Assembly (NCBI GenBank): GCA_964187785.1
Contig: OZ076420.1
Coordinates: 26,722,001-26,786,000 of the forward strand
From: Amphiscolops sp. MND2022
Lineage: Eukaryota
Direction of reading: 5' to 3'
Length of the DNA stretch: 64,000 nt
This document shows, piece by piece, positions 14,377 to 39,799 of the stretch (the stretch's first letter is position 1; each line of letters starts with the position of its first letter). The position numbers were made by a program, and so were the translations under genes. Under the pieces are notes generated by a model, which had not been told where the DNA came from, did no database searches, and worked only from the letters and a program-made list of their open reading frames with translations.

Positions 14377-14548
14377 TTAATTTGGCAAAATTCTGTATAG
14401 GAAGAAGTTGTAGAGCATTGACAGCACAAGAATACATGAGATGACCACAATCAAGATGGCTCCGAATATTCTTGAAGTTCCCGCTTTGGCTTTCAGCTCT
14501 TGAGTTTCCTTTTTGCCTTTAGGAAGCAGTGGAAGGAACAAAATAAAA
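14377..14548 (-). CDS. BT1/FBT transporter, exon 8 (terminal)
   Basis: FILFLPLLPKGKKETQELKAKAGTSRIFGAIL...PN*; LLP.xK.ETQEL is typical of FBT C-termini. Confidence 0.85.
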
Positions 14549-15560
14549 CTTCAAGCGAATCAGGGATGTTAAAATTATAGAAATTGACGCAATTTTGGAC
14601 TCGCTAAATTATTCCAAAACTGTTTTGATGATTTGGACCATAGACGATGGTCAAGACTTTTGATTGTTTTCCGCGCGAAATGACACCTGCAAGTGCATTT
14701 TGACAGTTTCAAATGAGTGCTCCTAGAAAAAGCAGGACCAGTCATATTTGAATATTAAATGATGAACTCAACGTCTTCAATGTTCGAATACTTCAACTAC
14801 CAATTTTTTTTTTCAAAAAAATGAGATGGTTTCGATAATTTTGCTTCTGGTAGAATTTTTGGGGGGAGACAAATCAAAGCCAGATGCTCTAAGGTTCCAA
14901 AAAGCTAAAAACATCAAATCTCAAATTTTTCTAAAATCAAGTGACAAGATAGTCCCAAATGGAAAACTGTCTCCAAGTTTGAATAGATTTACAGGGGTGT
15001 TTTTGTTTTGATATCAAACAAAGGATAGAAAACTTAAAACAGCTTTTTTTACTGTGGGCATTTTCTGAAATTTATCGTGCAATCTCAAAAGGAGCTGGTC
15101 ATAAAAAATGTTTGCAGCAAACTTTGTACCTTTTACTCAGATGTCTAACGCTTGACTTTAACATTTTTTTGGAAACGAGCTCCTCGAACATTTACACCGC
15201 AAAACGATCACATAAAGCGAATTCTTCCTTTTCACTTCATAAAATATTGTTTCGACGGAATTACAGCTGTTTTAGGCTGCTCATTTTTCAAGAAAGTATT
15301 TTCAAAAAATCGTTAGAGGTGAAAGGAAAAAAACGGTGTCAAGGGTACAAAAGTGATCCAGGGGAAGTTTCCATTCTGACCAGTACTTGTCGAGATTTTG
15401 CCTAATTAAGTTCAATTTTTGTTAGCTATATCGAGTGTTTTCACCTTCGTCGAACACTAGTGTATCCAACGCATCGAGGTATTCTAACTACCATTTCCAG
15501 AGCATGGTAGATTCGGAAAACTCCTAAAATAATAATTTTCTGATAAGTTAATTAGCATCC

Positions 15561-15741
15561 CTGGTGTTGCATGTAAAGATGATGATGTACTGAAGTGCAA
15601 CCATCATGCGGTCAGAGTGACTGTCTCTGTCGAAGCGGTGGTGGTCACTCACGTCGAAGGGGTATGCCAACAAGTTGGCTAAAATGGGACCCAGCGACGA
15701 GCTCGCATTCACTGATGTAGTCAGCACTGAATATGACAGAC
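15561..15741 (-). CDS. BT1/FBT transporter, exon 7
   Basis: GLSYSVLTTSVNASSSLGP; CTCAG acceptor; the donor is apparently non-canonical GG. Confidence 0.82.
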
Positions 15742-16074
15742 CTGAGACAAAATGCAATCAAGTACTTTCTACATTCAATATAAAATTTGATATAAGAGTG
15801 ATGGATATTCAAGTTGTCGCCTATTGGAAGTGCAGTTTTGCGGTATAATAGAAACTTCGATCAAAAACTGACTGTTTGCCTAACTGAACATTCATTTTGT
15901 CAAACGACATTTTTTTCCGAAAAAAGCGGAAGTAAAATATAATGCTCAAGAAAGAGGCACGTGGTTGTTATTTGCTGCCCACATATAATGAGGGAGGGAA
16001 TTCATAATCTGTGTTGCGTTTTTTTCCAAATTTTGCCAAATCTCCAATTTATTACTTAATTTGATAAATTCTAG

Positions 16075-16200
16075 TCACCATGACGCAGTTGGTATTGCGG
16101 CTGCCTGACAGACACGAGGTTCGAACCCATGATGAGGCGTTACATTTTCAGCGGAAAACAAACCCGGAGGTGCTTACCGGGTGTCTTGTTTAACATAATC
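16075..16200 (+). mobile_element. tRNA-derived SINE-like sequence
   Basis: A-box-like TGACGCAGTTGG (16081) and B-box GGTTCGAACCC (16118); no complete cloverleaf or CCA; 3' boundary uncertain. Confidence 0.5.
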
Positions 16201-16215
16201 TTAAGGAGGTGAAAT

Positions 16216-16747
16216 CCCTTGTTGAAACTATTTGAACTTTATGCATGTACTTTAATGTTGCCAGCAACTTTCATCATGATTTTCTAAAGCTCTTACGGAA
16301 ACGTTCATGCGAAAATCTTTCCCTGTTGTATTTAACTTTTACCAAGCTGCTTCAAAGATTCATGGTTTGCAGGTTTCTGAAGTTTTGCAGGTTTCATTAA
16401 GCAGCAGCTATAATTTTGCAAGCAAATAAACTGTTATCAGTTTTACCGCTAATATATTGCAAAATAATTTCAGGCGCGTAGTAAACTGCAAATTTGCGTC
16501 ATGTTTAACGTGCTATTTGAGAAGCGATGATCACATCAGATGAGTAGTTAAGAAAACAAAGAGTGAATAGAAAGTGATCATATTGAAAATATTGTATAAT
16601 TTATTTTCAAATTTAATTGCAGTACTGGAAAACGAAGTGTAATTGTGCATGATTTACCACCCAAAGTTCTCTGAATTTTCCAGGTTAAAAAAATACCCTG
16701 CATTCAGGCCTGCAGCATGTAAAAAGTTCCTGCAGTTTCAACTAGGG
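16216..16747. mobile_element. Possible MITE
   Basis: 14-bp terminal inverted repeat CCCT(T/A)GTTGAAACT with 13/14 matching; TSD not clear. Confidence 0.3.
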
Positions 16748-16991
16748 ATGTGAACCCTATCAAAAAGTTTTGCGACATCAATTGAACTTTATCATAACTT
16801 GTTGCATTTGTTTCCTGTCGAAAGTGTTGGGTTTTGACTACTGTTTTTAACTATATTACAGAAAACGTTCTCCCCTTATGTCGAAAACTAAGTTACGATC
16901 GGGCCTAAAAGAGCCGGAATTTTCAGGCGTGATTCAAATCAGAAAAAAAACGTTTGAGTGTTTGAAATTATCATTTGAAAAAAATTCGAAC

Positions 16992-17445
16992 CTTCATTGT
17001 CGGACTCTGATATCTCTATGAATAGCAACAAGACACATATGTAGGATACGCCTTGAAAAAACTGAATTCCCATGCCATCTATCACGTAGATGTACTGGTT
17101 TCTGATGACGTCAAAGATCACGATGTAGGTAACAGTGGCATTTGCCAAAACCCGAACTAGGGAAGTGATGGCGAATGTTGCAACCCAGCTATAGTCAATG
17201 AGGTATGTGGCGAACACAGTGGAACCTACAGAGAACATGACACCCCCAAGAACACCGACAAGCACGTTATTGGTCAAATTGTCTACCCCCACCCATTTTC
17301 GTTGAATCATGGAATCAGCTGGGGAAGAAACAGCGGTAAGAATTGCCACCGAAATTTGGAACACCAAAATCTGTTGAATGGCTTTAGATTTGAAGAGAGT
17401 CCAGGTTTTGGAAGCAACGTGTAGGACAGTATTCCGCTCCTTGAC
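16992..17445 (-). CDS. BT1/FBT transporter, exon 6
   Basis: Several TM helices, RNQY motif, ends IEISESDNEG; phase 0 in, phase 1 out. Confidence 0.88.
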
Positions 17446-17859: not shown

Positions 17860-18188
17860 CTTTTCTTCCGTTGTCATGAACATCACAGTCGGCACTGCGA
17901 GACAACTGACTAAGGCTGTTAACAGAAAAATGTGTGTGAGATCTATCCCATTGCACCAGGGGCCACTGTAGTCGTACCAGTTGAGACCAAACCCCTTGAC
18001 CAGAGATCCAACCACCATCCCAATTTGGCGAGTTACATATATCATGGTCTGGGCGGCACCCCTTTTCTTCATCGACTCCCTGCGTGCATACTGGACCATG
18101 AGCCCATCCATTGCAACAACACTGAGAACCAAGAAGAGGTTGAGGAGAAAGAGGAGCGTCATGTACTTGTAGGACTCTTTTTTGTAGT
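17860..18188 (-). CDS. BT1/FBT transporter, exon 5
   Basis: VVAMDGLMVQYARRESMKKRGAAQTMIY is the MFS/BT1 D-G..R-E..RG..Q motif; phases fit. Confidence 0.9.
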
Positions 18189-18374: not shown

Positions 18375-18451
18375 ATTCTTCCGTGTTTTCCTTGATGATT
18401 CCTTTGACGTCGCAGTTGCCCTTCTCAATTTCAACTGGGTCGTGGTAGAAT
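18375..18451 (-). CDS. BT1/FBT transporter, exon 4
   Basis: TTCCAG acceptor (phase 2) and GTGAGT donor (phase 1), consistent with both neighbours. Confidence 0.8.
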
Positions 18452-38836: not shown

Positions 38837-39799
38837 CTGAGGAAGAACTCCTTTCTTTTGAAAACATAGGTGCATCTTTGGAGCAAAGAATCTGAATTCT
38901 TTTGAGCCAGAGATGTAAACATAGAGGAGAATGTAAACATAGGAAACAAAAAGTTTCGTCAAAAAATATAGTTGGTCTGTTTCTGGATCAAACTGGGAGA
39001 ATGAAAATCTTGCCAAGACTATTAGAATCTTAGAAAACATGGAGAACTTGACAAAAGAAATTATTCATTGAATATCCCAGTCTCACATTCGAAGAGTTAT
39101 CAAGAGAGCTATCAATAAAATAATGACTCCGCCCGCAACTGCAGAATACAGTGATAAGCTTCATCACAGAAGTGACGTTGCCATACACGATGGACCTCAT
39201 AAAATCACTGACTGTGATGCTCCCTGCCTGCAAATCAAACAGGCAATGCAACGATGTCTTGAACCATCTTGAAGAAAAAAATGTCGCTAAAACTTCAGCT
39301 AAAATCTCAATTGACCAGCCAAGGCAAGAAATACGAACTTATTGGCTCCTTGATTTGATGGCTCCTGATAAAGAGTATCATGGTAATTTTGATGCCAATC
39401 CGATGAATACAACCAGCTGAAAAATAGGAGTACTTTTATCAGGTTCTTAATTGGGCTGATGCTCAATGAATACCTTTTCATACTGAGGAGAAAACAACTT
39501 ACTGTACAATCACTTTTGAAGCTATTGCAAGTGTGCCTCAAGAACAAACTCTAGAAAAAACAGTCGTTTCTTGCCAAATCTCTCACGAACTACTTTATGA
39601 GCTTTTCGAAATGAATTTTTATACAGGGAGATGGAATTTATCTACCTACGTTGATGAAAAAAAAAATCAATTATTTTGGCTGATAGAAAAGTTCTTTATC
39701 TCACGGACATTTTTTAGGTATTCAGTGGTAATTTGACCTTTTTCACGTGATTCAGCAAAGGTTACACGCGTGAAATGGAGAATCAGAAGGGGTTCTTTC

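What the first reader, a model, noticed from the sequence alone, without database searches (positions are those of the whole stretch)
15550..15570. Host intron 7 appears to use a GG 5' splice site
Seen: exon 7 reads ...QYIIIFTCNT-AG|GGATGC with a stop four codons later. The last exon has an in-frame TGA just before its acceptor, so it needs phase 2, giving AG+T = Ser. A canonical phase-2 alternative exists (CTT CA|GTACAT) but removes 10 hydrophobic residues from a TM helix. A second non-GT donor in an otherwise lesion-free 556-codon gene makes independent inactivating mutations less likely.
Basis: partly seen in the sequence, partly recalled or inferred. Interest (0 to 1): 0.7.

Follow-up and report, generated by a model that had tools for sequence, protein, structure and literature searches.

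The report
Conserved GG-start intron in acoel transporter gene
The last intron of a membrane-transporter gene in what is almost certainly the acoel worm Symsagittifera roscoffensis really begins with GG instead of the near-universal GT. The site is old and under selection, and it is one example of a genome-wide class of young non-GT introns that standard gene predictors will miss.

Summary
Exon 7 (minus strand) ends ...ACC AG|GGATGC at 15561/15560, an in-frame stop follows four codons later, and the last exon can only start at 14548, after an in-frame TGA.

GG is not an assembly error. Read contigs from four runs of one sample carry it. So do the tandem paralogue 86 kb away and an independent assembly of that paralogue.

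The two paralogues differ at dS 0.18 with dN/dS 0.26 and have no lesions. Both keep the GG donor and the GA donor of intron 2. The paralogue lacks the upstream GT alternative.

Three homologues without an intron here align without a gap across the GG-AG junction. The upstream GT donor would delete 10 residues.

The trait is not local. Paralogues on another chromosome and an actin-like gene carry further GG, GA and GC donors: 7 of 29 independent introns. All follow exonic AG and have A at +3, as published for the copepod Eurytemora affinis. U1 snRNA has a canonical 5' end.

The donor pairs with an 8-nt segment 12 nt before the acceptor.

The published S. roscoffensis spliced leader occurs about 2,100 times in this genome.

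No RNA data could be reached, so splicing is inferred. Earlier notes of this scan report the same class elsewhere in this genome.

The parts
15561..15741 (-). Exon 7 of the BT1-like transporter gene (GLSYSVLTT...ALQYIIIFTCNT + AG); enters in phase 1, leaves in phase 2
   Evidence: Preceded by acceptor TCTCAG|G. 93% identical at the protein level in paralogue A.
15559..15560 (-). GG at intron positions +1 and +2 (donor CAG|GGATGC)
   Evidence: Identical in read contigs, in paralogue A and in the independent assembly L048.
14549..15560 (-). Intron 7, 1012 nt, GG-AG. Absent from paralogue B, from the related species' gene (L024) and from P0082.
15556..15563 (-). 5' arm CAGGGATG of a helix that closes the intron (3 exonic + 5 intronic bases, covering the donor)
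   Evidence: duplex -15.1 kcal/mol against a null of -8.0 +/- 2.2. None of 223 internal windows reaches it, and 0.35% of shuffles do.
14561..14568 (-). 3' arm CATCCCTG, ending 12 nt before the acceptor and directly after a branch-site-like TTTTAAC (14574-14568)
   Evidence: The 21 nt TCTATAATTTTAACATCCCTG are identical in paralogue A, while the 12 nt after them carry 2 indels and 2 substitutions.
14549..14550 (-). Acceptor AG of intron 7, directly preceded by an in-frame TGA (14551-14553)
   Evidence: AG and TGA are conserved in paralogue A.
14377..14548 (-). Exon 8 (last exon): T + FILFLPLLPKGKKETQELKAKAGTSRIFGAILIVV...YRILPN, stop TAA at 14379-14377
   Evidence: Conserved in paralogues A (93%), B and C, and in distant BT1 proteins.
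15589..15590 (-). Upstream GT (CTTCA|GTACAT), the canonical phase-2 alternative. It would delete QYIIIFTCNT.
   Evidence: It is AT in paralogue A and in L048 (a synonymous CAG>CAA change). It matches the U1-complementary consensus at 4 of 9 positions.
39798..39799 (-). GA donor of intron 2 (AAACAG|GAAAGAAC; exon 2 = 39946-39800, exon 3 = 38836-38653)
   Evidence: Conserved in paralogue A and L048. The related species' gene has no intron here and aligns without a gap.
16992..17445 (-). Exon 6 (GT-AG introns on both sides)
17860..18188 (-). Exon 5
18375..18451 (-). Exon 4 (RFYHDPVEIEKGNCDVKGIIKENTEE), donor T|GTGAGT
   Evidence: The same exon is present in paralogue A, and it has the same length as exon 4 of L024.

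Best explanation
Intron 7 is a genuine, functional GG-AG intron. Its mRNA joins 15561 to 14548. It completes the last conserved transmembrane helix of a BT1-family (folate/biopterin-transporter-like) protein; exon 8 also adds one further hydrophobic stretch. The genome is that of the acoel Symsagittifera roscoffensis or a very close relative.

The intron is not a fresh lesion. It arose at a position that is uninterrupted in other family members. It predates a tandem duplication, and both copies have kept it under purifying selection.

It belongs to a genome-wide class of lineage-specific introns that start with G followed by A, G or C. All follow an exonic AG and have A at +3.

The most likely route is the ordinary U2-type spliceosome. 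U1 snRNA here has the canonical 5' end. The donor still matches the U1-complementary consensus at 6 of 9 positions (CAG|G.A.G.), so only the +2 position is relaxed.

An 8-bp helix pairs the donor with a segment 12 nt upstream of the acceptor, next to a branch-site-like TTTTAAC. It may bring the two splice sites together, or it may be a relic of inverted repeats of an inserted element.

Shown: the sequence, its conservation, the selection, the colinearity with homologues that lack the intron, and the recurrence in other genes. Inferred: that the junction is used in RNA, that the major spliceosome removes the intron, and that the helix plays any role.
For: - The sequence and the unique frame-keeping GG-AG solution.
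- GG is in the read contigs, in paralogue A and in the independent assembly L048.
- Window gene against paralogue A: dS 0.183, dN 0.047, dN/dS 0.26 over 485 codons. Fisher p = 4e-11 for synonymous against non-synonymous changes. No stops.
- The ten codons between the two candidate donors differ only by one synonymous change, and that change removes the GT in A.
- The junction aligns without a gap to paralogue B (no intron here), to the related species' contig L024, to P0082 and to the distant BT1 proteins P0020 and P0009.
- Other non-GT donors: paralogue C has GC, GA and GG; paralogue B has GC twice; an actin-like gene has GG and GC. That is 7 of 29 independent introns. All 9 non-GT donors follow AG and have A at +3.
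- The one intron position shared by all family members is GT-AG everywhere.
- U1 snRNA starts ATACTTACCTG in most copies read, in both sequence types.
- Helix: -15.1 kcal/mol against a null of -8.0 +/- 2.2. Complementarity between donor and intron 3' end is longer in non-GT than in GT introns (mean longest run 7.0 against 4.1 nt, p = 5e-4).
- Organism: the 32-nt spliced leader published for S. roscoffensis (PMC9911081) has 2,107 matches and none in the reversed control.
Against: - No RNA evidence. The one run search returned only DNA runs of one sample. No transcript-derived protein spanning the junction is in the protein collections.
- A helix that covers the donor could hinder U1 binding rather than help it.
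- The helix arms are identical in all three copies, so there is no covariation.
- Absence of the minor spliceosome is not established: no U12 match, but only 43 of about 88,000 candidates were scored.
- The intron tally comes from two gene families and is not a random sample.
Confidence: 0.8

Rival explanations
1. The upstream canonical donor (CTTCA|GTACAT, 15591/15590) is the one used. It gives a protein 10 residues shorter in the last conserved helix.
For: It is the only GT in phase 2 and it joins in frame to the same acceptor.
Against: - Paralogue A and L048 have AT there, through a synonymous change.
- The ten codons it would remove are conserved as coding sequence. They align residue for residue with three homologues that lack the intron.
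- It has no exonic AG and matches the U1-complementary consensus at only 4 of 9 positions.
Confidence: 0.05
2. The T>G change at +2 disabled the intron. The gene, and its duplicate, are decaying or make a protein that ends ...FTCNTRDAN* without exon 8.
For: In most eukaryotes a +2 G abolishes splicing. No expression data were obtained.
Against: - dN/dS is 0.26 overall and 0.26 for exons 7+8 alone since the duplication, with no lesion in either copy.
- Exon 8 is conserved in four paralogues and in distant homologues.
- The same kind of donor recurs in other intact genes.
Confidence: 0.05
3. The intron is removed by another route. Either the minor (U12-type) spliceosome removes it, or a structure-guided, non-U1 route like that of the euglenid nonconventional introns does, with the terminal helix defining the cut sites.
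For: - GG-AG termini are listed among rare U12-type introns (PMC2831892, as listed).
- A significant helix joins the two intron ends.
- Euglenid nonconventional introns are defined by such a structure (PMC3935182, PMC6221363, abstracts).
Against: - The donor GGATGCTA departs from the U12 consensus RTATCCTT (recalled from memory) at +2, +5 and +8.
- The branch-like TTTTAAC lies 19-26 nt from the acceptor.
- No U12 snRNA was found (inconclusive).
- Unlike euglenid introns, every non-GT intron here keeps G at +1, AG at the 3' end, exonic AG and A at +3. That is a spliceosomal signature.
Confidence: 0.07
4. GG is an assembly or sequencing error for GT.
For: A single-base error would turn a good donor CAG|GTATGC into the observed sequence.
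Against: Contigs built from four read sets carry GG. So do paralogue A and an independent metagenome-style assembly.
Confidence: 0.01

Closest known systems
Genome-wide GA and GG donors in the copepod Eurytemora affinis (Robertson 2017, PMC5714493)
   Same: - The intron starts with G followed by A or G and ends in AG.
- AG is obligate at the end of the upstream exon, and A is nearly always at +3.
- The introns sit at lineage-specific, apparently recent positions.
- About 10-12% of introns are affected.
- Automated gene models fail at these sites.
All of these features are seen here.
   Different: - The host is an acoel, not an arthropod: no Chitin_bind_4 cuticle genes and the S. roscoffensis spliced leader is present.
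- GC donors are as common as GA/GG in my sample.
[quoted passage not shown]
- The copepod sites were verified with RNA-seq; these were not.
Non-canonical introns of the larvacean Fritillaria borealis (Henriet 2019 as cited in PMC11282704; PMC13326754)
   Same: A U2-type spliceosome with a strictly conserved U1 5' end removes non-GT introns. The canonical GT-AG introns are the ones at old, conserved positions.
   Different: - Fritillaria introns are mostly AG-AC or AG-AT, and fewer than 10% obey GT-AG.
- Here G at +1 and AG at the 3' end are always kept, and most introns are still GT-AG.
- I did not examine U2AF duplication or snRNA modification here.
Transposon-derived introns (introners, MITE-like elements) with terminal inverted repeats and target-site duplications (review PMC11282704)
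   Same: - The intron is present or absent among close homologues.
- Its ends are complementary.
- Several young introns in the paralogues and in the actin-like gene have clear 11-14 nt inverted ends.
   Different: - For intron 7 itself no target-site duplication is visible.
- The 5' arm includes three exonic bases.
- The ends of the intron occur only twice in the genome, in this gene and its duplicate.
Euglenid nonconventional introns (PMC3935182, PMC6221363)
   Same: An RNA helix brings the two exon-intron junctions together (abstracts; helix).
   Different: Euglenid introns have variable borders and no complementarity to U1. These keep G...AG, the exonic AG and 6-7 of the 9 consensus positions that pair with U1.

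Membership tests
G-only (GA/GG/GC) U2-type donors, as in E. affinis | The intron begins with G plus a non-T base and ends in AG, and the junction restores the reading frame | tested here: met
   Unique GG-AG solution 15561/14548, with no gap against the reference protein.
G-only (GA/GG/GC) U2-type donors, as in E. affinis | Obligate AG at the end of the upstream exon and A at +3 | tested here: met
   Seen in 9 of 9 non-GT donors. Among GT donors, 17 of 22 follow AG.
G-only (GA/GG/GC) U2-type donors, as in E. affinis | Found in unrelated genes at a frequency of several percent | tested here: met
   7 of 29 independent introns are non-GT (3 of them GA or GG), in BT1 paralogues B and C and in the actin family. 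The sample is small and not random.
G-only (GA/GG/GC) U2-type donors, as in E. affinis | Spliced reads across the junction | not testable with these tools
   Only DNA runs were offered. No junction-spanning protein is in the collections.
Transposon-derived intron (introner / MITE) | Terminal inverted repeats at the intron ends | tested here: inconclusive
   There is an 8-bp complement, CAGGGATG/CATCCCTG, at -15.1 kcal/mol. However, the arms are offset: -3..+5 at the 5' end and 12 nt inside at the 3' end.
Transposon-derived intron (introner / MITE) | Target-site duplication flanking the element | tested here: not met
   No matching flanks by eye on the sequences.
Transposon-derived intron (introner / MITE) | Other copies of the element in the genome | tested here: not met
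   The first 120 and the last 122 nt of the intron each match only this gene and paralogue A.
U12-type (minor) intron | Donor RTATCCTT and a branch site TCCTTAAC 10-15 nt from the acceptor (consensus recalled from memory) | tested here: not met
   The donor is GGATGCTA. TTTTAAC lies 19-26 nt from the acceptor.
U12-type (minor) intron | U12 snRNA gene present in the genome | tested here: inconclusive
   No match to RF00007, but only 43 of about 88,000 candidates were scored.
BT1 family transporter (PF03092), host gene | Match to the Pfam BT1 profile | tested here: inconclusive
   Single exons do not reach the cut-off. The homologues P0020, P0009 and P0008 pass it. The related species' exon 2+3 frame is recorded as PF03092. 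The spliced protein was not submitted as a whole.

The most novel reading that the evidence does not exclude
In this acoel, young introns can dispense with the +2 U because an RNA helix pairs the donor region with a segment 6-13 nt upstream of the acceptor, next to the branch site. This would be structure-assisted splice-site pairing layered on an otherwise canonical U1/U2 spliceosome. Intron 7 of this gene would be an old, selectively maintained example.
Probability: 0.3. Interest if true: 0.75.

Novelty: new member of a known kind. Interest (0 to 1): 0.55.

Why it matters
Standard gene prediction and RNA-seq mapping reject GG, GA and often GC donors. If roughly a tenth to a quarter of introns in S. 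roscoffensis use them, many published gene models of this model acoel are truncated or split, as happened in the copepod.

I found no paper in the searchable library that describes non-GT donors or transposon-born introns in acoels.

This intron is a useful test case. It is old (dS 0.18 since the duplication), it is under selection, and it has a defined donor-to-acceptor helix. It also has natural controls: a paralogue without the intron, and another paralogue with a GG intron ten codons upstream.

It would let one ask how strict the +2 position really is for a spliceosome with a canonical U1.

Tried and rejected
- **RNA evidence.** The single run search used a 4.1-kb stretch that was mostly intron. 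It returned only four DNA runs of one sample. A search with exons only might have found RNA runs.
- **Apparent second haplotype.** I first read the other letters in the read table as a second haplotype, including a synonymous variant that destroys the upstream GT. They are the letters of paralogue A laid across at 90% likeness or more. I withdrew that reading.
- **Close database proteins.** P0001, P0002, P0004, P0005 and P0014 are single-exon frames called on unspliced DNA, so they say nothing about splicing.
- **Terminal helix.** With intron bases only, the helix of intron 7 was not significant (p about 0.27). It becomes significant when the three exonic bases are included.
- **Introner origin of intron 7.** I saw no target-site duplication, and the intron ends have no other copy in the genome.
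- **Resemblance to the maize Ac terminal repeat.** CAGGGATG resembles it as I recall it from memory. I did not test this and it is not used as evidence.
- **Copepod host.** Rejected: no Chitin_bind_4 match and the acoel spliced leader is present.
- **U12 snRNA.** No match, but inconclusive.
- **COX1 for species identification.** Abandoned, because TGA codons break the protein into pieces too short for the length-filtered search.
- **Unresolved junctions.** Two actin junctions (L060 near residue 54, L057 near residue 205) could not be resolved. Exon 1 of the host gene was not located.

Full report
**What is in the sequence.** The gene lies on the minus strand. Exon 7 (15741-15561) reads ...DRMMVALQYIIIFTCNT and ends with AG. 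The next bases are GGATGCTAATTAA, so the frame stops after four more codons. The only open frame that continues the protein starts at 14550. It is preceded by an in-frame TGA and an AG, so the last exon begins at 14548 and AG+T gives Ser. The upstream GT at 15590 is in the right phase but would remove ten codons. I scanned every donor/acceptor pair that keeps the frame, avoids stops, and stays within two residues of the length expected from a homologue without this intron. It returned one G?-AG solution, GG-AG at 15561/14548. It returned no GT-AG, GC-AG or AT-AC solution.

**The GG is not an error.** The run search returned four DNA runs of one sample and no RNA run. Their contigs match the window without a difference from 15046 or 15241 to 15572. 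Other letters listed nearby (15472, 15474, 15481, 15507, 15590) are exactly the letters of a tandem paralogue. They come from that copy and not from a second allele. I had first misread them.

**The host gene.** Exon by exon, the gene matches proteins that pass the Pfam BT1 cut-off (folate/biopterin-transporter family): P0020, P0009 and P0008. My model is:

| Exon | Coordinates |
|---|---|
| 2 | 39946-39800 |
| 3 | 38836-38653 |
| 4 | 18451-18375 |
| 5 | 18188-17860 |
| 6 | 17445-16992 |
| 7 | 15741-15561 |
| 8 | 14548-14380, then TAA |

Exon 1 was not found. Introns 3, 4, 5 and 6 are GT-AG. Intron 2 starts with GA (AAACAG|GAAAGA) and intron 7 with GG. By this numbering the Polinton and the other mobile elements between 38.6 and 18.5 kb lie in intron 3.

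**Conservation under selection.**
- The genome holds a tandem paralogue A, 86 kb away on the same strand.
- Paralogue A has the same ACCAG|GGATGCTAATTAAC and the same GA donor in intron 2.
- It also has the same acceptor AG with the same in-frame TGA before it.
- At the upstream site it reads CAA TAC, not CAG TAC, so the canonical alternative is absent there.
- Over 485 aligned codons the two copies differ at dS 0.183 and dN 0.047 (dN/dS 0.26). Exons 7+8 alone also give 0.26. Neither copy has a stop or a frameshift. The excess of synonymous change is significant (Fisher p = 4e-11).
- An independent assembly of paralogue A (L048, from an ENA metagenome-type assembly) shows the same three features.
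- A neutral lesion shared by two decaying copies would not leave this pattern.

**Colinearity with homologues that lack the intron.**
- Paralogue B on another chromosome has one uninterrupted frame through this point...ALQYAIIFVCNLGTLLFLPLLPRGKKETQ.
- A related species' contig (L024; about 87% protein identity to paralogue C) has exons 2+3, 5+6 and 7+8 fused. Its three remaining introns are all GT-AG.
- A third homologue from another metagenome, P0082, is also uninterrupted here.
- All three align to the GG-AG product without a gap: eleven residues separate the conserved CN from the end of LPLLP in each.
- The distant P0020 and P0009 keep the same 37-residue spacing from the DxHS motif to KKET.
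- The GA-spliced product of intron 2 is colinear in the same way.

**The trait is not local.** I used the spliced L024 protein as the yardstick for the BT1 paralogues.
- Paralogue C has introns GT, GC, GA, GT and GG. The GG one, ATACAG|GGATGT, lies ten codons upstream of ours.
- Paralogue B has GC, GT, GT, GT and probably GC.
- The one intron position shared by every family member and by L024 is GT-AG everywhere.

As an unrelated control I used the actin family, with an intron-less copy as reference.
- Seventeen resolved introns at the classical positions are GT-AG.
- A divergent actin-like gene on C8 has one GG-AG and one GC-AG intron.

Leaving out this gene and its duplicate, 7 of 29 introns are non-GT and 3 of 29 are GA or GG. 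All nine non-GT donors follow an exonic AG and have A at +3. This is the signature Robertson reported for Eurytemora affinis, where about 12% of introns have GA or GG donors, appear recent, and broke the automated gene models (PMC5714493).

**How it probably works.**
- The genome has 21 U1 snRNA genes above the Rfam cut-off. Most of the copies read, in both sequence types, start with the canonical ATACTTACCTG.
- The donor CAG|GGATGC matches the U1-complementary consensus at 6 of 9 positions. The GA donor matches at 7, the gene's own GT donors at 4 to 7, and the upstream alternative at 4.
- The simplest reading is therefore a normal major spliceosome that tolerates a mismatch at +2 when the exonic CAG and +3A are present.
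- No U12 snRNA was found, but that search scored few candidates. The donor also does not fit the minor-intron consensus.

**An intron-closing helix.**
- CAGGGATG (15563-15556) is the exact complement of CATCCCTG (14568-14561). That segment ends 12 nt before the acceptor and directly follows a branch-site-like TTTTAAC.
- The duplex is -15.1 kcal/mol against -8.0 +/- 2.2 for 223 other windows of the same intron. None of those windows reaches it, and 0.35% of shuffles do.
- In my sample, the longest complementary run between the donor and the last 40 nt is longer in non-GT introns than in GT introns: mean 7.0 against 4.1 nt, n = 8 and 22, p = 5e-4.
- All three GG introns carry AGGGAT at the donor and ATCCCT 9-12 nt before the acceptor.
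- In paralogue A the 21 nt that hold the branch-like motif and the 3' arm are unchanged, while the next 12 nt carry two indels and two substitutions.

Whether the helix helps splicing or is a relic of inverted repeats cannot be decided here. The arms never vary, so there is no covariation. For intron 7 I saw no target-site duplication, and the ends of the intron occur nowhere else in the genome. Some younger introns, such as the GA intron of paralogue C and the GC intron of the actin-like gene, do have 11-14 nt inverted ends typical of miniature transposons. That route of intron gain is well documented in other lineages (PMC11282704).

**Organism.**
- The 32-nt spliced leader published for Symsagittifera roscoffensis (PMC9911081) has 2,107 matches with at most two mismatches. 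The 100 places listed are all exact, and the reversed control has none.
- Assembly size (1.07 Gb) and the GC content of the window agree with that paper's 1.1 Gb and 36.7%.
- No arthropod cuticle-protein domain was found.
- The library holds no paper on non-canonical splice sites or introners in acoels.

**Relation to earlier notes of this scan.** Notes on other parts of this genome report GG donors in a dynein gene, five consecutive non-GT donors in another gene, helices that close such introns, and transposon-born introns. I used them as leads only. Here I tested the recurrence, the helix association and the acoel identity myself. I did not test the dynein case or the reported GT/GG allele pair.

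**Verdict.** This is an old, conserved, selectively maintained GG-AG intron. It is one member of a lineage-wide class that resembles the published copepod case and is, as far as the library shows, undescribed for acoels. The missing piece is RNA.

Noticed in passing
window 18375-18451 and 18452-38652: Exon 4 lies at 18451-18375. By exon count, the Polinton (about 19.3-32.6 kb) and the other mobile elements up to 38.6 kb therefore sit in intron 3. That intron is about 20 kb here and about 1.2 kb in the tandem paralogue.
   Followed up: partly
G000:C5:72771160-72797473 (paralogue C) versus L024:8940-11590: Paralogue C has introns at four positions (near residues 192, 313, 362 and 448 of the reference) that are absent from its roughly 87%-identical counterpart in a related species. 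Three of them have non-GT donors, and all four have significant end-to-end complementarity. This points to fast intron turnover between close relatives.
   Followed up: partly
L062 = G000:C8:48474101-48478300: An actin-like gene has a 371-nt GG-AG intron (AAAAG|GGATTT ... AATCCCTAACTGACAG|). It also has a 734-nt GC-AG intron whose ends are 13/14 inverted repeats (GGCAAGGATTGTCA / TGACAATTCTTGCC).
   Followed up: partly
L043, L044, L045 (G000:C13:49602042, C12:24071965, C7:41249350): Three U1 snRNA gene copies above the Rfam cut-off have altered 5' ends (ATATTTAAACCTG, ATTCTTACCTG, ATACTTACTTG) beside the canonical ATACTTACCTG. There are two divergent U1 sequence types: C8-type and a cluster on C12. 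Whether the variants are expressed is unknown.
   Followed up: no
window 15944-16765 (intron 6): Read-contig word depth rises from about 90 to as much as 5e5 in the four runs. This part of intron 6 therefore holds a very high-copy repeat.
   Followed up: no
G000:C5:72668529-72710173 and 72771160-72797473 versus window: The BT1-like paralogues on C5 use GC-rich codons (for example CTGCTGTTCCTGCCGCTGCTGCC). The two C12 copies are AT-rich at the same residues. The family's nearest full-length relatives in the databases are only 26-35% identical, and the feature-based neighbours are mostly from plants, diatoms and oomycetes. The origin of this family in an animal that hosts algae was not examined.
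   Followed up: no
whole genome: The 32-nt S. roscoffensis spliced-leader sequence occurs about 2,100 times, spread over all large pieces. That is a very large number of SL RNA genes or their relics.
   Followed up: no
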